Shown here in pieces: positions 13,151 to 22,577 of a stretch of 64,000 nucleotides of DNA. Under the pieces are notes generated by a model, which was given only the letters and a program-made list of their open reading frames with translations, was not told where the DNA came from and made no database searches. The stretch lies in IMG/VR virus record IMGVR_UViG_3300032242_002454, positions 124,001 through 188,000 of that record. One strand, given 5' to 3'. The position numbers and the translations under genes were made by a program. Numbering within the stretch: position 1 is the stretch's first letter; the number at the start of each line of letters is the position of its first letter.

Positions 13151-14071
13151 ATGAGATTCGGACTGTGTTGCATTTCTCTCAAACTTAAAGATCAAGGTTT
13201 TGGTCATCAGACTATGACCTTTAAGCGTTTTAATTCTTTGCCAAGAGAAGAAGCATTAGAAACTCTTGGAGATAGAATTCTAAATAATCTAGTTACAACA
13301 AACAAGACTATTCAGTTTTGTGCAGAAAATAATTATACCTATCGCGTTAGTAGCGATATTTTTCCACTTATTACTTATGATGAAGCAAATGTTGAATTGG
13401 AAGATTTACCTAATCATGATGCTATCCAAGATGAGTTCGACAATATCTCAAACACTATTGCCCATACTAATGTTCGGGTTTCTGCTCATCCTAGTGAATT
13501 TAATAGTTTGGCAAGTCTCAACGAAAAAGTTGTCGAAAAAACAATCTCAGAACTCAACTTCTACAGTAGTTTCTTTGACAGAATAGGGTTGCCAGCAGAC
13601 CGTAGATCACCCATGAATTTTCATGTTCATAACAATAACGGAACCAGAGAAGAAATTGCCCACAGATTTTATAACAACTTCAAAAAACTGGACAAAAATT
13701 GTCAGGATCGTATAACAATAGAGAACGATGATAAACTAAATTGTTGGAGTGTTCAAGAATTGGTAGATATTTTCCATCCAATTACACGCATCCCGATCTG
13801 TTTCGATTATCTGCATCATAAATGTCACCCCAATAATTTGTCGGAAAGTGATGCTATTAATATGTGCTGGGAAACTTGGCAAACAAAACCTCTTTTTCAT
13901 TATAGCGAATCATCACTAGGAACTAATCCTCGTAAACACGCAGATTATGCAGTAAAACCCTTGAATACTTATGGACTAGAGTTTGATCTTGATATGGAAT
14001 TGAAAGCTAAAGACTTGGCTATTGCAGAGTACAGTGAACTTTTAACCAGAGAGATTTCAAATGTCAGCTAA
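13151..14071 (+). CDS. uvsE: UV DNA damage repair endonuclease
   Basis: RFGLCCI, YRVSSDIFP, SAHPSEF, IENDD, FDYLHH, HYSES, RKHADY, MELKAKD. Confidence 0.95.
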   Translation: MRFGLCCISLKLKDQGFGHQTMTFKRFNSLPREEALETLGDRILNNLVTTNKTIQFCAENNYTYRVSSDIFPLITYDEANVELEDLPNHDAIQDEFDNISNTIAHTNVRVSAHPSEFNSLASLNEKVVEKTISELNFYSSFFDRIGLPADRRSPMNFHVHNNNGTREEIAHRFYNNFKKLDKNCQDRITIENDDKLNCWSVQELVDIFHPITRIPICFDYLHHKCHPNNLSESDAINMCWETWQTKPLFHYSESSLGTNPRKHADYAVKPLNTYGLEFDLDMELKAKDLAIAEYSELLTREISNVS

Positions 14072-16113: not shown

Positions 16114-16518
16114 ATGGGTAAGGGTCAAAAAACTTGTGATAAATGTGGAGCTACCACAGGCCCAAGAGCTTATATGTGTCCTAAATGCAATGCTCCATTT
16201 GTTTTTAAGGCAAAGAGCAAAGAAGCAAAGAACACGAAGATTATTCGTGACTTTAATTGGAAAGAACTGGTAAAGGGAGATCGTATCAGAGTTGGTGGAG
16301 GCCCATACTTTGTATCCAAGGGAGATTTTGTTCCTATGGGTTATAGGGGTCGTTTTGTTGTGGAGGGTCTTGACCATGATGGAATTAAAGCATGGGGGCT
16401 AGACAAGCATCAAGGTTTTTGTCATATCTATATGGGGCCAGATATTCAGAACAAAGAAACTGGCGTATGGAAGATTAAACATAAGCTTATGAAACTCAAA
16501 CAAAAAGTGGAGGCGTAA
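16114..16518 (+). CDS. zinc-ribbon protein
   Basis: KTCDKCG...CPKC double CxxC; AGGAG RBS. Confidence 0.7.
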   Translation: MGKGQKTCDKCGATTGPRAYMCPKCNAPFVFKAKSKEAKNTKIIRDFNWKELVKGDRIRVGGGPYFVSKGDFVPMGYRGRFVVEGLDHDGIKAWGLDKHQGFCHIYMGPDIQNKETGVWKIKHKLMKLKQKVEA

Positions 16519-16802
16519 TGTCTCTTACACAGGAACAACGGGATCAGATTAATAGGCTCATAGATTACCGTGATGAGATGGTAAGTAGTTTATTTCATAT
16601 TGAGCGTATTCTTAAAACATATTTTCCAGAAGAATTTGAAAGAGCTATCCAGTTTTATCTGCCTCAAATTACCACTGCTCTTTATGAGGATAAAAAGTGG
16701 CTAAGTAGAGGCGAGTATAGTTTGCAGAACACTATTGACAATCTGATAGAGCGGTGTAAAACGATAGACAGTGGCGACAAGAATATCAATAAGTATCTCT
16801 AA
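16518..16802 (+). CDS. hypothetical protein
   Basis: ORF track. Confidence 0.65.
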   Translation: MSLTQEQRDQINRLIDYRDEMVSSLFHIERILKTYFPEEFERAIQFYLPQITTALYEDKKWLSRGEYSLQNTIDNLIERCKTIDSGDKNINKYL

Positions 16803-16817
16803 TTTGGAAAGACTATT

Positions 16818-17189
16818 ATGGAAACCTATAGTATTATTGATCTTGAGGGATATGCTAAGGCTATGAGAGATGGTGCCGCATCTTCTTTTGAAAAAGACTA
16901 CACAGAAAATCTTGATGATTTCATCACTATTGAGCAAGTAATCAATCTTATCAAGAAAAATAATCTTGGTTTGGATGAGGACGGGAACTACATTATTAAC
17001 TCTAATATTTTTGATGAAATGTTTGGGGAGATTAGGGACTGGCTTTATGGTGTTGGACTTTCTAAGTTGGCAGCAAAAGGCTTTGTAGATTGTGCATGGG
17101 ATGATGAAGCTAATGAGATGGTATTCTGGTTAGCTAATAAAGACAAGACTAATATTCCAGCAAAACCATCAGTAGATAATGATGACTGA
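16818..17189 (+). CDS. hypothetical protein, paralog family A
   Basis: C-terminal SKLAAKGFVDCAWDDEANEMVFW. Confidence 0.75.
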   Translation: METYSIIDLEGYAKAMRDGAASSFEKDYTENLDDFITIEQVINLIKKNNLGLDEDGNYIINSNIFDEMFGEIRDWLYGVGLSKLAAKGFVDCAWDDEANEMVFWLANKDKTNIPAKPSVDNDD

Positions 17190-17553
17190 ATACTACAAAG
17201 TTAAAAACATCAAATTGTTTGCTAAAAGTATCAGAAAGAATGTTGCCCTTTGTTTCCCCAAATCTTATTCTGCTCAAATAGATGAGTTGATTTCAGTTGG
17301 TCAAACAGAAAATCTAATAAGACAGTATGCTGAAATTTCTTCTAATGATGAATTTTTAATGAGTGAAGATAATTATAATCTGATATTTGACAATATTAAA
17401 GCTTGGCTATATAATAGTAGTCTAAGTAAGCTTGCATCTTCTGGAGAGATAGAGTGTGCATGGGATGATGAAATAAATGAAATGATCTTTTGGCACACAA
17501 AATCTTCAGAAAAATTCCATATTGCCTCTTGTTCTAGAAATAATTATGAGTAA
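17179..17553 (+). CDS. hypothetical protein, paralog family A
   Basis: C-terminal SKLASSGEIECAWDDEINEMIFW. Confidence 0.75.
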   Translation: MMTEYYKVKNIKLFAKSIRKNVALCFPKSYSAQIDELISVGQTENLIRQYAEISSNDEFLMSEDNYNLIFDNIKAWLYNSSLSKLASSGEIECAWDDEINEMIFWHTKSSEKFHIASCSRNNYE

Positions 17554-17709
17554 TCAAAACGAAATAAATGAACTAAAAAATCAAATACATGATTTAAAAG
17601 AATATCTATATTCTGATTTATGTAAGGCTTGTGGAGAGGCAGCATTATCTCTGGAGAAAATTAGCGAAAGATTAAATGAACTAGAGTCTCAACAAAATTC
17701 CTAAAGGTC

Positions 17710-17738
17710 TTGACAGTGGTTGGTCGATAGGATACAAT
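17710..17738 (+). promoter_or_regulatory. sigma70-type promoter (class I) driving the tRNA/tmRNA locus
   Basis: TTGACA-17-TACAAT, spacer TCGATA. Confidence 0.85.
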
Positions 17739-17751
17739 AGAAAGACAATAC

Positions 17752-17824
17752 GGGGCGTTCGTCTAATGGTCTAAGACGCTAGTCTTATTAACTAGCTAAG
17801 GGAGTTCGATTCTCTCACGCCCTA
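17752..17824 (+). tRNA. tRNA-Ile (anticodon UAU), atypical U37
   Basis: Acceptor GGGGCGT/ACGCCCT+A; D stem GTCT/AGAC; anticodon stem CTAGT/ACTAG with loop CT-TAT-TA; T arm GGGAG-TTCGATT-CTCTC. Confidence 0.8.
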
Positions 17825-17864
17825 CTTTTGCTTTAAGTATTCGATTCTTGATTGAAAGCAAGTA

Positions 17865-18065
17865 ATGAAACTACAGCCACTAACAGTAATTTTTGCTGGA
17901 TTATTTCTAGTATCACTAGGATTTAATATTCTATTGACTATACAGGTAAAAAAACTAGCTAATAAGCCTCCCAGAATTATTATAGAAAGAACACCAGAAA
18001 TTCATATCAAACCAAAAGTTTGGGGGTATACTAAAGAATGGGCTAGTAAAGGTATCGACAGGTAA
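17865..18065 (+). CDS. small single-TM protein whose 3' end overlaps tmRNA
   Basis: Hydrophobic helix LTVIFAGLFLVSLGFNILLTI; last 8 codons and stop lie inside tmRNA. Confidence 0.55.
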   Translation: MKLQPLTVIFAGLFLVSLGFNILLTIQVKKLANKPPRIIIERTPEIHIKPKVWGYTKEWASKGIDR

Positions 18066-18389
18066 AATAGATATAGATGGCATCGACTGGTTAATCGACC
18101 GGCCAGTTTAAAAGTCGATTAAAATTGTTAATTGGCGAAGTAACTCTCGCTCTCGCTGCCTAATTAATTAGGTAATGAGTGGGGCGGCATGAGCCTTATT
18201 ACCAAATCATGCTGACTCCGATATTCGGATATGGTAGTCTTACCAGACATAAATAAGACTGATGATTGTACTCAATCTGACGCAGATAATTCTGATAGCT
18301 TTGTTGGTAGTGTGATAACAACCAACTAACGATGTAGAAGTTTGTATTGATGTTTATTCTGGACGGCAGTTCGACTCTGCCCTAGTCCA
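18040..18389 (+). ncRNA. ssrA: tmRNA; tag peptide (A)GEVTLALAA
   Basis: Acceptor GGGCTAG/CTAGTCC+A with G3:U70 and A73; 5' GG-N-ATCGAC; T arm GGCAG-TTCGACT-CTGCC; internal ORF 18134..18163 ending LALAA-TAA. Confidence 0.93.
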
Positions 18390-18443
18390 CTTAATTTAGC
18401 TCTTGTTCATATTTTGGTGTAAAGATATGTACAGGAAATAACT

Positions 18444-18977
18444 ATGAAAACTAATACATCTGTTGATTGTGCATATTGTGGTAAAAAAGTAGTAAAATTA
18501 GCTTCAGAAGTAAAAAGACGAAGGAAAGTAGGAAAAGATAAGTTTTATTGTAATAATAATTGTTCTGGTAAGCATAAGGCTGTTTATGTTATGCCATATA
18601 AGGATAATTTCAAAAAAACAAAATATACTAGACAACCAGATAAGTTTGCTAATTTTAGATGGTATATAAAAAATGTCATCAAAAATTCTAAAAAACGTAA
18701 TCAGGAATATGATATAGATCTAGAATATTTGAATCAATTATGGGAAAACCAACTTGGAGTCTGTCCATTTACTAAACAGAAATTAGAACTCAGAACTCAC
18801 AGCTATAAAAATAAGAAACATCCATATTCAGCTTCTTTAGATAGAATAGATAATACAAAAGGCTATATCAAAGGGAATATAAGATTTGTTGCTTTGATAT
18901 TCAATTACGCAAAGAACACATTTAACGATCAACAAGTTTTAGATTTTTGTCAAAACACAGTTTTAAGTATATCATGA
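18444..18977 (+). mobile_element. free-standing HNH-type (His-Me finger) endonuclease
   Basis: N-terminal CAYC...YCNNNC; C-terminal CPFT...SLDRIDNTKGYIKGNIRFV. Confidence 0.7.
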
Positions 18978-19540
18978 TAAATCCTAATGACGTAATTTTA
19001 CATACTATAGATGCAAAATTTACACAACTTATAATCTCTAATGCTAAAAAAGCAGAGATTGGAGGAAAATCTCAAATTAGAAATTCTAGTAAAAGATTAT
19101 CTAATTTAGCAGAAGATCAGTTGGTCGGTCAAATATCTACATATTGTGGATCAATGATACTAACTGGTTCTCCAGAAGGATATATTCAAGCAAGAGATAA
19201 AGCAAATGCTACTCCTTTGGCTGGAGATAATGGACTAGATATAGTTGGTCTACCTAATGTGGATATTAAAGGTAGTTTGATGAGGTATTCTAATAATCCC
19301 CTAAATTACAGACTATTAGTTAGACCAAAAGAAAGACACGAAAACTGGATTTATGTATTAGCATTAGTTCCAAAAGAAAGACCGTATAAAACTTATCTTG
19401 TGGGATGGGCTAATGACAATGATCTTCCATCAGAACCATATAATGGAGAGATAATATCTTTACATGGTGCATATGTTATTGAGGCTAGAAACTTAAGAAA
19501 AATTGAAGAATTAATTTCTCTTCAACATAATTATGTCTAG
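18974..19540 (+). CDS. hypothetical protein, possible PD-(D/E)XK fold
   Basis: LDIVGLPNVDIKGS pattern; weak. Confidence 0.45.
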   Translation: MINPNDVILHTIDAKFTQLIISNAKKAEIGGKSQIRNSSKRLSNLAEDQLVGQISTYCGSMILTGSPEGYIQARDKANATPLAGDNGLDIVGLPNVDIKGSLMRYSNNPLNYRLLVRPKERHENWIYVLALVPKERPYKTYLVGWANDNDLPSEPYNGEIISLHGAYVIEARNLRKIEELISLQHNYV

Positions 19541-19958
19541 AAAAATTTGCATTTACTGTGGTAAAAGGAAAAATGCCAAGTCTTTTGCTAGACATATTGG
19601 ACATAAAGATAATCTGGACAGTAGATGCAGAAAGTGCGTTAAACAACATACTAAGATTAGAAATAAACTAAGGAAAAAGGCTCCTCAAAAGCCAGATGGT
19701 TGTGAGTGTTGTTTTTGTAGTCCAGATAAATGGCACCTAGATCATGACCATGTTTATCATACCTTTAGGGGATGGTTATGTGAAACTTGTAATATAGGGA
19801 TAGGAAAATTAGGAGATAATTTAGAAGGTATTGTTGCTGCTTTGAAATATTTATCAGTAAGAAGTAAGGTTGAAGATCAAGCTGTGCTAAATCACATTAT
19901 TCAAGGCGTGGTTTTTTCTTTAAACCATTTGCTAGAGAAAAGACGAAATGATGCTTGA
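19533..19958 (+). CDS. recombination endonuclease VII-like protein
   Basis: CECC...HLDHDH...RGWLCETCNIGIGKLGDN. Confidence 0.88.
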   Translation: MSRKICIYCGKRKNAKSFARHIGHKDNLDSRCRKCVKQHTKIRNKLRKKAPQKPDGCECCFCSPDKWHLDHDHVYHTFRGWLCETCNIGIGKLGDNLEGIVAALKYLSVRSKVEDQAVLNHIIQGVVFSLNHLLEKRRNDA

Positions 19959-20008
19959 CAACAGCATTACCGTATGCTATACTTGGGAAAACACAGGAGA
20001 AATTGGAA

Positions 20009-21307
20009 ATGTCATTTGAGCATCTTAATGGTTTTGTTCGTGATCTGAAAGCAACTAGTAGTACACTTGATAAAGTTGGAATTATTGAGGATTATACCTC
20101 TTCCAATCAGGCTGGAGCAGATTTTATCAAAAAGATTTTGCTCTATACTTATCATCCTCTTTGGCAGTATAATGTGACCAGCGATAATCTCAAAAAGAAA
20201 TCTTCACTCAGAGGACAATCTTTTAAGACTGTTTTTGATTTGCTAGATTCTTTGAAGAACAGAGAAATCACAGGTCACGATGCTATTGGAGCAGTTAATA
20301 CTTTTATTGACAATAATGGATACGAAGAACTCATCCACTGTATTATTGATAAGGATTTGAAAACCCGTGCTGGAGATAAGTTAATCAATAAGGCTATTCC
20401 AGATCACATTCCAACATTTAGCGTTGCATTAGCGGACAAGTATGTTCCTAAAATTGTAGACTGGAAGGATGGATGGTATGTTAGCAGGAAGATCGACGGT
20501 GCTAGATGTATTGCTATTGTTGACAGTAATGGTAATACTACCTTTTATTCCCGCACGGGAAAAAACTTTGATACTCTTGACGTTGTTAGCGGTGGGATTA
20601 AAGCTTTGGGACTTACTAATGTAATTCTTGATGGAGAACTTTGTCTTGTTGATGAAGATGGTAATGAGGATTTTCAAGGAGTAATGAAAGAACTTCGCAA
20701 GAAGGATCATACTATTCCTAATCCTTCATATAAGATTTTTGATATGATTACTCATGATGAATTTTATAGTCAGAAGGGAGAACATAATAGACCCTTTGGT
20801 ATCAGACTCAAGAATCTTACAGAAGTTATGAAAAAGAATGAATGTCCATGCCTAACACTATTGGATCAGTCCTTGATTAAGGACGAAAACCATTTTCAAG
20901 AATTTGTCAAAGAATCTACTCAGAATGGTTGGGAGGGACTTATGCTTCGTGCAGATACTCCTTATAAGGGTAAGCGATCAAAAGACCTTCTCAAATATAA
21001 ATCATTCTTTGATGACGAATATGAAGTTCTAGATACTGAAATGGGGCCGTTCCGCTATGTTAAAGATGGTGCAGAGTGCGAGGAGATTATGTTGAGTTGT
21101 GTTATGATTCAACATAAGGGTCATACTGTCAGGGTTGGTTCTGGTTTTAGTATTGATCAAAGACAAGAGTTTTATAAGAATCCTAAGAAGATTTTGGGCA
21201 AAATAATTACTGTCCAATACTTTGAAGAAACAGAAAATGAAAAGGGTGGTATTAGCCTAAGATTTCCGACATTTAAAATTTTGCATGGGGATGAGAGGGA
21301 TATTTGA
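20009..21307 (+). CDS. ATP-dependent DNA ligase
   Basis: SRKIDGARC (KxDG), LDGEL, EGLML, DLLKYK, SLRFP; AGGAG RBS favours ATG 20009. Confidence 0.95.
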   Translation: MSFEHLNGFVRDLKATSSTLDKVGIIEDYTSSNQAGADFIKKILLYTYHPLWQYNVTSDNLKKKSSLRGQSFKTVFDLLDSLKNREITGHDAIGAVNTFIDNNGYEELIHCIIDKDLKTRAGDKLINKAIPDHIPTFSVALADKYVPKIVDWKDGWYVSRKIDGARCIAIVDSNGNTTFYSRTGKNFDTLDVVSGGIKALGLTNVILDGELCLVDEDGNEDFQGVMKELRKKDHTIPNPSYKIFDMITHDEFYSQKGEHNRPFGIRLKNLTEVMKKNECPCLTLLDQSLIKDENHFQEFVKESTQNGWEGLMLRADTPYKGKRSKDLLKYKSFFDDEYEVLDTEMGPFRYVKDGAECEEIMLSCVMIQHKGHTVRVGSGFSIDQRQEFYKNPKKILGKIITVQYFEETENEKGGISLRFPTFKILHGDERDI

Positions 21308-21801: not shown

Positions 21802-21830
21802 TTGACAAGACGATAGGACTAGTGTACAAT
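21802..21830 (+). promoter_or_regulatory. sigma70-type promoter (class I)
   Basis: TTGACA-17-TACAAT, spacer ACGATA. Confidence 0.85.
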
Positions 21831-21866
21831 CACAGCATACACTTTGGAAACAAACTTGGAGTTGAA

Positions 21867-22577
21867 ATGTCTGACCTAATCCAGCAAGATCGAATTGAAA
21901 AAAAGCCTGTTGTTATGAGTACCAGCAAGGCCGATGAATTTTTTAAGAATTTTCCCAAGGACAAGGTTGTTGCTTATAAAGATTATTGGGAAACTGTTCG
22001 TCCCAAGACTGATGAAGATATTTTTCGTCGCTATCTTTTTGCTTATTGCTCAGTTCACACCACTTGGCAAGGTAATGTCAAAGGATATAATGCTATTAAG
22101 AATTTTAGCGAATGGGTAGATAGCAAAGAAATTCTTTTGGAAAAACTTCATAAGAGTGGCGTCGGTCTACACAATAATCGCACCACTTATATCTGGGATT
22201 TTAGTACCAAGTTTTGGGCTAATCCTAAAGACTTTTATTTGACTACCAAGAAGTATCATGTTAAGAAACGAGACAGTATCCTTAATAAGATTAGTGGGAT
22301 TGGTCTGGCTAAAATTAGCTTTGCTCTTGAAATGATCCATCCTAATGAGGCAAGAGTATTGTGCGGAGATATTCACCAATTGAGACTTTACGATGTCGAG
22401 GCTCTTAAGTATAATAAAAGTAAGTCTGGCTCAGAGATTTATAAAAAGATGGAGCGTCACTGGATGGTGAATTGTGGAAAGCTTAAAGTTCCATCGTATG
22501 TTGCCCGATCAATCTATTGGGATGATCTGCAAAAGAAAGAAGATAGTCGTTACTGGAGTTATGTTCTGGAGAACTAA
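21867..22577 (+). CDS. putative helix-hairpin-helix DNA glycosylase-like protein
   Basis: ISGIGLAKISF (HhH-like) followed by GDIHQLR. Confidence 0.45.
   Translation: MSDLIQQDRIEKKPVVMSTSKADEFFKNFPKDKVVAYKDYWETVRPKTDEDIFRRYLFAYCSVHTTWQGNVKGYNAIKNFSEWVDSKEILLEKLHKSGVGLHNNRTTYIWDFSTKFWANPKDFYLTTKKYHVKKRDSILNKISGIGLAKISFALEMIHPNEARVLCGDIHQLRLYDVEALKYNKSKSGSEIYKKMERHWMVNCGKLKVPSYVARSIYWDDLQKKEDSRYWSYVLEN

What the first reader, a model, noticed from the sequence alone, without database searches (positions are those of the whole stretch)
17865..18065. A gene whose stop codon lies inside the tmRNA: maturation would create a non-stop mRNA
The last 8 codons and TAA (18063..18065) of the TM-protein ORF are within the tmRNA 5' domain that starts at 18040. 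If promoter 17710 makes a tRNA-ORF-tmRNA precursor, RNase P cleavage at 18040 removes the stop. The resulting non-stop message is exactly a tmRNA substrate, so the product would be tagged by the RNA it flanks, and ribosomes on the uncleaved RNA would disrupt tmRNA folding. This would be a built-in feedback or timing switch, and I know of no described equivalent. Alternative: TATACT at 18027..18032 is a separate tmRNA -10 box.
Basis: partly seen in the sequence, partly recalled or inferred. Interest (0 to 1): 0.75.

Follow-up and report, generated by a model that had tools for sequence, protein, structure and literature searches.

The report
Membrane-protein gene overlapping a phage tmRNA
A real small membrane-protein gene of an uncultured freshwater jumbo phage ends 26 bases inside the phage's own tmRNA gene, but close relatives move that stop codon in and out of the tmRNA freely, so the overlap looks like a tolerated by-product of tight gene packing and not a built-in switch.

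Summary
Rfam places a full-length tmRNA at 18040..18392 (88.6 bits). The 66-codon ORF 17865..18065 ends 26 nt inside it. A consensus promoter (17710..17738) and tRNA-Ile(UAU) (17752..17825) lie upstream, with no terminator between.

The ORF is a real gene: dN/dS is 0.14 across 19 relatives and it has an N-terminal membrane helix. The unit promoter, tRNA-Ile, membrane ORF, tmRNA recurs in a clade of roughly 190-240 kb lake phages. A transcript carrying the ORF therefore runs into the tmRNA, and cutting at tmRNA base 1 would remove the stop here.

The "designed feedback switch" is not supported:
- The stop lies anywhere from 23 nt before to 26 nt inside the tmRNA.
- Only 15 of 37 distinct relatives would lose it, with at least 5 switches on the tree.
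- Two of the three ORF subtypes always stop before the tmRNA.
- The 8-residue tail follows compensatory changes in the tmRNA acceptor stem.
- The last codons before the tmRNA (GTTTGGGGGTATACT) are frozen at wobble positions.

Programmed non-stop mRNAs controlled by tmRNA are already known (E. coli arfA). Interest is modest.

The parts
17710..17738 (+). P1: sigma-70-type promoter-like site, TTGACA-17-TACAAT
   Evidence: 11 of 12 matches. It is one of 7 perfect TTGACA-N17-TANAAT sites in the window, all on the + strand, with 0.2 expected. The same sequence, spacer included, sits upstream of the tRNA/ORF in relatives: a P1-like site lies within 260 nt of the ORF in 21 of 36 distinct loci.
17752..17825 (+). 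tRNA-Ile, anticodon UAU; CCA not encoded
   Evidence: ARAGORN and Rfam at 55.1 bits. A tRNA-Ile(tat) lies upstream of the ORF in all 17 relatives scanned, either adjacent or about 600 nt away.
17865..18065 (+). 66-aa single-pass membrane protein gene (subtype A); hydrophobic helix at residues 8-26, basic C-terminal part
   Evidence: Homologues. dN/dS 0.14. Best Kyte-Doolittle 19-residue window scores 2.38 at residues 8-26. No Pfam or PHROG family.
18018..18032 (+). Nucleotide-level conserved block GTTTGGGGGTATACT (codons V-W-G-Y-T) holding the -10-like hexamer TATACT at 18027..18032; candidate tmRNA promoter P2
   Evidence: Minor synonymous codons are 1 of 92 here against 170 of 774 elsewhere in the ORF, Fisher p 0.0036. 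GGG is fixed although it makes up only 6% of Gly codons in the window's long ORFs. A similar motif is read in another frame in L046 and is non-coding in L079. No good -35 is present.
18040..18065 (+). The 26-nt overlap: tmRNA 5' acceptor strand and start of helix 2, read as (W)ASKGIDR plus stop
   Evidence: In relatives the tail varies as ASKGIDR, AIPGIDR or AITGIDR, exactly as the acceptor stem changes with compensation on the 3' strand.
18040..18392 (+). One-piece tmRNA (ssrA); G3:U70 acceptor stem, T-arm, CCA not encoded
   Evidence: Rfam RF00023, 88.6 bits, model positions 1-374. 39 distinct relatives are 60-98% identical, 82-98% excluding the outlier L038. Lake metatranscriptome contigs cover 18053..18350 at word depth up to 423.
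18134..18163 (+). tmRNA tag reading frame GGC...GCC TAA, giving (A)GEVTLALAA
   Evidence: alignment to the Rfam resume region. Relatives encode GEVTLALAA, GEVSTLALAA, GEVNLALAA, GKTSLALAA and GERTFALAA.
18444..18977 (+). Next gene on the same strand: HNH-type endonuclease. No terminator-like site between it and the tmRNA.
   Evidence: PHROG 3322 'endonuclease', E 9.6e-23. Zero terminator-like sites in 16500..19500.

Best explanation
A conserved transcription unit of a clade of freshwater jumbo phages reads: strong sigma-70-type promoter, tRNA-Ile(UAU), small membrane-protein gene, tmRNA. The membrane-protein gene is real and abuts the tmRNA. In subtype A its last codons overprint first a short conserved DNA element just upstream of the tmRNA, most likely a -10 box for the tmRNA, and then, unless a stop arises in the 1-2 free codons in between, the first 26 nt of the tmRNA, up to the first in-frame UAA. 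The 8-residue tail is dictated by the RNA and is evolutionarily labile. The tmRNA is matured by host RNase P from read-through transcripts and probably also made from the internal -10 element (inferred). In this phage, some ORF messages will therefore lose their stop and be handled by trans-translation. That is a tolerated side effect of packing, not a conserved regulatory switch (inferred from comparative data).
For: The tmRNA and ORF coordinates and the 26-nt overlap come.

The ORF is under purifying selection: dN/dS 0.14, dS 0.85.

Anchoring on the tmRNA alone (63 loci) shows a homologous 58-83 aa N-terminal-helix ORF directly upstream almost everywhere. Its stop lies at -23 to +26 relative to tmRNA base 1.

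Counts by subtype:
- A: +26 in 9, +7 in 2, +1 in 3, -1 in 3, -6 in 1, and a gene inserted in between in 2.
- B: -9 in 7, -5 in 1.
- C: 0 in 4, -4 in 4.

On a tree built without the junction, 15 loci would lose the stop and 22 would keep it, with at least 5 changes. P0042 equals P0032 minus the tail.

The tail follows compensatory acceptor-stem variants: GGGCUAG/CUAGUCC in 29, GGGCGAU/AUCGUCC in 9, GGGCGAG/CUCGUCC in 1.

The block GTTTGGGGGTATACT is invariant at wobble positions. It recurs in another frame (L046) and in non-coding spacer (L079). The 5-15 nt between it and tmRNA base 1 are variable.

P1 and tRNA-Ile are conserved upstream. No terminator-like site was found.

In L011 and L019 a methyltransferase gene with its own TGcTATAAT sits between ORF and tmRNA, leaving no comparable -10 hexamer next to the tmRNA (only TAAGTA, 4 nt before base 1). 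Subtype C has only weak -10-like matches and varies at wobble positions right up to the tmRNA. Maturation from read-through transcripts must therefore work in this clade.

Metatranscriptome contigs cover the tmRNA at depth 5-423 and do not extend upstream of 18053.
Against: Within subtype A the read-in form is the majority: 36 of 50 protein clusters (a search biased toward the query's own tail). Some benefit in that subtype cannot be excluded.

The candidate -10 box has no convincing -35. The hexamer 17 nt upstream reads ATATCA or ACATCA, 2-3 of 6. It belongs to no repeated promoter class in the window.

No 5'-end mapping exists. The RNA data are assembler contigs without strand or precise ends, and they also stop 40-110 nt short of the tmRNA 3' end, so they cannot separate a primary from a processed 5' end.

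Host, RNase P cleavage and translation of the ORF are all inferred.
Confidence: 0.6

Rival explanations
1. The overlap is a selected feedback or timing device. RNase P maturation of the tmRNA removes the ORF's stop, so the membrane protein is ssrA-tagged and destroyed once tmRNA is being made, and ribosomes finishing the ORF delay tmRNA folding.
For: The geometry is as described. The P1, tRNA, ORF, tmRNA unit is conserved with no terminator. The read-in form is frequent in subtype A. Even the +1 forms (TAG whose G is tmRNA base 1) and the +7 forms would lose the stop on cleavage. A precedent for the logic exists in arfA.
Against: The stop position is not conserved: 22 of 37 relatives keep it, with at least 5 switches. 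Subtypes B and C always stop 0-9 nt before the tmRNA. Near-identical proteins occur with and without the tail. The tail sequence is set by RNA-level compensation. Only 1-2 free codons separate the conserved block from the tmRNA, so read-in is the mutational default, not a sign of selection. A likely internal -10 box uncouples tmRNA synthesis from the ORF message.
Confidence: 0.12
2. The tmRNA is made essentially only from its own promoter (TATACT, 18027..18032), starting at or next to 18040. ORF messages from P1 are a minor, separately decaying population, so non-stop messages are negligible.
For: Wobble-invariant -10-like block. The motif occurs in three coding contexts, and the hexamer lies 5-7 nt before base 1 in most subtype A loci. 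RNA contigs start 13-22 nt inside the tmRNA and none continues upstream. ORF positions 17930..18052 have zero depth, against depth up to 423 on the tmRNA.
Against: P1 transcripts have nowhere to stop before the tmRNA. L011, L019 and subtype C have at most a weak -10-like match next to the tmRNA. L013 has a 15-nt gap, so a leader and RNase P are still needed there. The -35 is weak. A stable RNA will outnumber its precursor whichever way it is made.
Confidence: 0.2
3. The ORF is not a gene. It is only an open frame in the spacer of a stable-RNA operon, so there is no overlap of functional elements.
For: No Pfam or PHROG family. The Shine-Dalgarno-like sequence is weak in the window (gaaagcaagtaATG). 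No expression was seen over 17930..18052 in four metatranscriptomes.
Against: dN/dS is 0.14 with abundant synonymous change over the membrane helix. Length and architecture are conserved across three subtypes whose C-terminal parts differ. Most relatives have AGGA or AAGG 8-12 nt before the ATG.
Confidence: 0.03

Closest known systems
E. coli arfA: programmed non-stop mRNA controlled by tmRNA
   Same: An endonuclease cut inside the 3' part of the ORF removes the stop codon. The truncated product is ssrA-tagged and degraded while trans-translation is active (PMC3989581).
   Different: arfA is cut by RNase III at a hairpin inside its own ORF, the outcome is conserved, and the product is itself a ribosome-rescue factor. 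Here the cut would be RNase P at the 5' end of an overlapping tmRNA. The stop-less outcome is not conserved. The protein is an unrelated membrane protein with no ArfA family match.
tRNA punctuation of animal mitochondrial transcripts (established knowledge, Ojala et al. 1981; not checked in the library here)
   Same: Messages are released from polycistronic precursors by excision of flanking tRNA-like structures. ORF ends abut or overlap the tRNA, so cleavage leaves an incomplete stop or none.
   Different: In mitochondria polyadenylation completes U or UA to UAA. No such completion is known or shown here. The flanking RNAs are a tRNA and a tmRNA of a phage.
Phage-encoded tmRNAs
   Same: tmRNA genes occur in huge phages (PMC7162821) and in about 2.3% of sequenced phage genomes, sometimes just downstream of an early promoter (PMC9004378). 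This one is a canonical one-piece tmRNA with an ...LALAA tag and no phage SmpB.
   Different: None of the passages I read describes a protein gene reading into the tmRNA, or the conserved tRNA-Ile, membrane ORF, tmRNA unit. No cultured phage matches this locus.
Bacterial ssrA precursor processing
   Same: The tmRNA 5' end is made by RNase P, as for tRNAs (PMC3985003 abstract).
   Different: Bacterial ssrA is normally preceded by a short non-coding leader, not by the last codons of a translated gene.

Membership tests
tmRNA (Rfam RF00023) | Full-length covariance-model match above the gathering score | tested here: met
   88.6 bits against 47, model positions 1-374, at 18040..18392. 19 relatives score 73-114 bits.
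tmRNA (Rfam RF00023) | tRNA-Ala-like acceptor stem with G3:U70, plus a T-arm | tested here: met
   GGGCUAG/CUAGUCC with G3:U70. Three stem variants in relatives all keep pairing through compensatory changes.
tmRNA (Rfam RF00023) | Internal tag reading frame ending in a hydrophobic ...LAA-type degron and a stop | tested here: met
   GEVTLALAA plus TAA at 18134..18163. The frame is conserved with variants in 38 of 39 distinct relatives.
tmRNA (Rfam RF00023) | SmpB partner available | tested here: not met
   No SmpB (PF01668) in the 204,625-bp phage record. It would have to come from the unknown host, so function is inferred.
arfA-like programmed non-stop message | Loss of the stop codon by processing is a conserved property of the gene family | tested here: not met
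   15 of 37 relatives would lose the stop and 22 keep it, with at least 5 changes. Subtypes B and C always keep it.
arfA-like programmed non-stop message | Endonucleolytic cut upstream of the stop shown; tagged product detected | not testable with these tools
   Only assembler contigs of metatranscriptomes were available. None spans 18030..18050.
arfA-like programmed non-stop message | Sequence homology to ArfA | tested here: not met
   No Pfam family at E 0.01 or better for the 66-aa protein.
Sigma-70-type promoter for the tmRNA (P2) | -10 hexamer at the right distance from the RNA's first base, conserved beyond coding needs | tested here: met
   TATACT lies 5-7 nt before base 1 in most subtype A loci. 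Wobble invariance gives p 0.0036. The motif is also present in another frame and in non-coding spacer.
Sigma-70-type promoter for the tmRNA (P2) | -35 hexamer or extended -10 (TGn) | tested here: not met
   ATATCA or ACATCA 17 nt upstream, 2-3 of 6. No TG at -15/-14. The consensus scan did not list it.
Sigma-70-type promoter for the tmRNA (P2) | Mapped transcription start | not testable with these tools
   No primary-transcript data. Contig ends at 18053..18062 are compatible with it but not decisive.
Co-transcribed tRNA, ORF, tmRNA unit | Conserved promoter upstream, same strand, no terminator between the parts | tested here: met
   P1 is conserved. tRNA-Ile is present in all 17 relatives scanned. 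No terminator-like site in 16500..19500.
Co-transcribed tRNA, ORF, tmRNA unit | RNA molecules that bridge the junctions | tested here: inconclusive
   One depth-7.3 contig of a relative joins the tRNA and the ORF 5' part in an RNA library, where DNA carry-over is not excluded. None bridges ORF and tmRNA.

The most novel reading that the evidence does not exclude
In subtype A phages, including this one, the membrane protein's expression is deliberately limited by the tmRNA it overlaps. Every transcript that yields a mature tmRNA also yields a stop-less message whose product carries the phage tag (...GYTKE-AGEVTLALAA) and is degraded. Protein level would then report the balance between precursor processing and trans-translation capacity. 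This would be an arfA-like circuit built from RNase P and a phage tmRNA.
Probability: 0.12. Interest if true: 0.6.

Novelty: new variant of a known kind. Interest (0 to 1): 0.35.

Why it matters
Phage tmRNAs are widespread but functionally unstudied. This locus shows how one is embedded: a conserved stable-RNA-plus-small-gene unit in abundant lake jumbo phages, expressed in lake metatranscriptomes.

The overlap gives a natural series of variants with the stop at +26, +7, +1, 0, -1, -4 and -9 relative to an RNase P site. That series could be used to ask how close to a processed 3' end a stop codon can sit before trans-translation takes over.

It also cautions against reading a single genome's overlap as design. 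The comparative data show the feature drifting.

Tried and rejected
- blastn of 17500..18500 against 50,697 cultured-phage records found no match, so there is no annotated or experimentally studied relative.
- Scanning bacterial and archaeal genomes for the tmRNA 5' 20-mer, to find a host, gave only 7 scattered MAG or genome hits in unrelated phyla. The host remains unknown.
- I looked for a repeated phage promoter class resembling TGGGGGTATACT. There were 8 hits at up to 2 mismatches against 3.1 expected. At least three of the others lie inside called ORFs, and none is visibly intergenic or gene-proximal, so this is not a class.
- SmpB is absent from the phage genome.
- Pfam and PHROGs give nothing for the membrane ORF.
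- ARAGORN fails on the window's tmRNA, so the tag was read from the Rfam alignment and from relatives.
- I saw no complementarity by eye between the conserved 15-nt block and the tmRNA 3' trailer, so a precursor helix is unlikely (sequence, no tool run).
- An UP-element reading of the second wobble-invariant block, ATTATTATAGAAAGA (codons I-I-I-E-R), is left as speculation because 3-nt indels change its spacing.
- Metatranscriptome contigs could not settle primary against processed 5' ends.

Full report
**1. What is there**

The window is bases 124001-188000 of a 204,625-bp viral record with direct terminal repeats.

Rfam places a complete one-piece tmRNA at 18040..18392 on the + strand: 88.6 bits against a gathering score of 47, model positions 1-374. 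ARAGORN misses it here but calls the homologous tmRNA in relatives.

The acceptor stem GGGCUAG/CUAGUCC carries the alanine identity pair G3:U70. This fixes base 1 at 18040. The tag frame at 18134..18163 encodes GEVTLALAA followed by a stop. CCA is not encoded.

The ORF 17865..18065 (66 aa) ends with TAA at 18063..18065, 26 nt inside the tmRNA. Upstream lie TTGACA-17-TACAAT at 17710..17738 and tRNA-Ile(UAU) at 17752..17825. No terminator-like site exists anywhere in 16500..19500.

**2. The ORF is a real gene**

A back-translated search found 21 viral loci encoding a homologue. A protein search found 50 further clusters, all unnamed or "hypothetical".

Across 19 distinct subtype-A genes, codons 2-56 give dN/dS 0.14 at a mean dS of 0.85. 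Synonymous change is dense over the hydrophobic N-terminus.

Residues 8-26 form a strongly hydrophobic helix, with a Kyte-Doolittle 19-residue mean of 2.38. The rest is basic.

There is no Pfam or PHROG match.

**3. An unbiased view from the tmRNA side**

Searching viral contigs for the tmRNA's first 20 nt gave 63 loci. Almost all have a 58-83 aa ORF with the same N-terminal helix directly upstream on the same strand.

Three C-terminal subtypes exist:
- A: ...IKPKVWGYTK
- B: ...QKLEAGPA...KQERMV
- C: MKYRLLF...RLIELEN

The stop ends between 23 nt before and 26 nt after tmRNA base 1. Counts by subtype among 36 distinct contexts:

| Subtype | Stop position relative to tmRNA base 1 (number of loci) |
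|---|---|
| A | +26 (9), +7 (2), +1 (3), -1 (3), -6 (1), another gene inserted (2) |
| B | -9 (7), -5 (1) |
| C | 0 (4), -4 (4) |

On a tree built from the ORF's first 120 nt plus tmRNA positions 31-345, with the junction excluded, 15 loci would lose the stop on cleavage at base 1 and 22 would keep it. This needs at least 5 changes of state.

In the protein database, 36 of 50 subtype-A clusters carry the read-in tail. However, P0042 is P0032 without the tail, and P0049 is nearly identical to P0024 up to where the tail begins. The switches are single-base or 2-nt events in the 1-2 codons between the conserved block and the tmRNA.

**4. The tail is written by the RNA**

The tmRNA acceptor stem occurs as GGGCUAG/CUAGUCC (29 distinct sequences), GGGCGAU/AUCGUCC (9) and GGGCGAG/CUCGUCC (1). 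It is always fully paired with G3:U70.

The protein tails ASKGIDR, AIPGIDR and AITGIDR are simply these RNA variants read in frame. The stop is the first in-frame UAA, in the conserved GACAGGUAA.

**5. A nucleotide-level element under the last codons**

Codons V57-K62 (GTT TGG GGG TAT ACT AAA) show 1 minor synonymous codon in 92 observations. Over codons 1-56 the figure is 170 in 774 (Fisher p 0.0036 by column). GGG is fixed although it makes up only 6% of glycine codons in the window's long ORFs.

All subtype-A loci in the tmRNA-anchored list carry this block, so the conservation is not a selection artefact.

A closely similar motif is read in a different frame in L046 (tct ttg ggt gta caa tag). 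It lies in the non-coding 23-nt spacer of L079 (tttggggtatagt), whose ORF is subtype-B-like. L027 has ggtgtatatt at the same place.

The 5-15 nt between the hexamer and tmRNA base 1 vary freely. This is the pattern of a -10 box with a variable discriminator.

Against this reading, there is no convincing -35 or TGn. The motif is also not a repeated promoter class in the window.

**6. Read-through must also work**

P1, including its spacer, and tRNA-Ile(UAU) are conserved upstream of the ORF in most relatives. L009 and L014 carry TTGACA-17-TATAAT directly in front of the ORF. The window has 7 perfect TTGACA-N17-TANAAT sites, all on the + strand, against 0.2 expected.

In L011 and L019 a Methyltransf_24 gene with its own TGcTATAAT and GGAGA is inserted between ORF and tmRNA. 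The tmRNA then follows that gene's stop by 17 nt, with no comparable -10 hexamer beside it.

Subtype C has only weak -10-like matches and varies at wobble positions right up to the tmRNA.

The clade's tmRNA can therefore be matured from messenger-tmRNA co-transcripts. By analogy with all tmRNAs this would be by RNase P (PMC3985003). That step is inferred.

**7. Expression**

Four lake metatranscriptomes hold contigs 95-99% like 18053..18350, at word depth 5-423. None continues upstream of 18053, and 17930..18052 has zero depth.

One depth-7.3 contig of a subtype-B relative joins the tRNA to the ORF's 5' part.

These are assembler contigs without strand. They also stop short of the tmRNA 3' end. 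They show that the tmRNA accumulates far above the ORF message, but not how its 5' end is made.

**8. Interpretation**

| Shown | Inferred |
|---|---|
| The overlap | Transcripts from P1 run into the tmRNA |
| The gene's reality | RNase P cutting at 18040 leaves ...GYTKE plus one base with no stop |
| The conserved unit | Such messages are rescued by trans-translation |
| The lability of the stop position | A -10 element inside the ORF also drives the tmRNA |
| The RNA-dictated tail | |
| The frozen 15-nt block | |

The comparative pattern fits a tolerated by-product of overprinting in a tightly packed unit, not a selected switch.

**9. Comparison with known systems**

- The logic of a deliberately stop-less message policed by tmRNA is established for arfA (PMC3989581).
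- Message ends created by excision of tRNA-like structures, with incomplete stops, are classic in animal mitochondria (my own knowledge).
- Phage tmRNAs are known (PMC7162821; PMC9004378).
- What the passages I read do not describe is a translated gene reading into a tmRNA, or the conserved tRNA-Ile, membrane ORF, tmRNA unit.
- The phage has no SmpB and no cultured relative. Its host is unknown.

**10. Verdict**

This is a new variant of known kinds, of modest interest (0.35). The functional-switch reading keeps about 0.12 probability.

Noticed in passing
window 7326, 13104, 17387, 17710, 21802, 24323, 47863 (all + strand): Seven perfect TTGACA-N17-TANAAT sites against 0.2 expected. Four of them (13104, 17710, 21802, 24323) share a CGATA motif in the spacer, and the P1 spacer TGGTCGATAG is conserved in relatives. 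This may be a phage-specific early promoter class or an operator.
   Followed up: partly
L004 2897-2976, L052 5135-5214, L084 4082-4163 and other relatives: The tRNA-Ile(UAU) upstream of the ORF varies from 73 to 82 nt, with different D-arm and variable regions. In the 20-locus scan, Rfam's tRNA model reached threshold only for the copies in L009 and L019, while ARAGORN found one in all 17 loci it scanned.
   Followed up: partly
L019 3221-3787 and L011 (equivalent place): A 188-aa Methyltransf_24 gene (E 2e-20) with its own extended -10 (TGcTATAAT) and GGAGA is inserted exactly between the membrane ORF and the tmRNA. This junction appears to be an insertion hot spot.
   Followed up: partly
window 18444..18977 (+): An HNH-type endonuclease (PHROG 3322, E 9.6e-23) lies 52 nt downstream of the tmRNA. 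It may be a mobile homing endonuclease. In L006, L020, L029 and L048 the sequence between tRNA-Ile and the membrane ORF reads, by eye, as a minus-strand gene start with AGGAGG.
   Followed up: no
window 16818..17189 and 17179..17553 (+): Two tandem paralogous ORFs of 123 and 124 aa share ...KLA..G..(D/E)CAWDDE.NEM.FW.... They have no Pfam or PHROG family.
   Followed up: no
window 13151..14071, 19533..19958, 19955..21307, 21822..22577 (+): A DNA-repair cluster surrounds the locus: UvdE UV-endonuclease (E 7.7e-43), endonuclease VII, ATP-dependent DNA ligase (about 32% identity to Bacillus phage ligases) and an Ogg-type glycosylase.
   Followed up: partly
window 18040..18392: ARAGORN does not detect this tmRNA, although Rfam scores it 88.6 bits and ARAGORN detects close relatives (L017, L030, L039). 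Surveys of phage tmRNAs that rely on ARAGORN alone will undercount this clade.
   Followed up: yes
window 17988..18002 (codons I-I-I-E-R of the ORF): A second block, ATTATTATAGAAAGA, is invariant or nearly so at wobble positions in 19 relatives, with the AUA codon fixed in all 18 that have Ile there. It lies about 50-60 nt upstream of the tmRNA start. Whether it is an UP-like element or reflects codon preference is undecided.
   Followed up: no
window 17826..17864: In the leader between the tRNA and the ORF, TTGCTTT can pair with AAAGCAA just before the ATG, which would cover the weak ribosome-binding region. The 5' arm is absent in L009 and L014, so it is not conserved.
   Followed up: no
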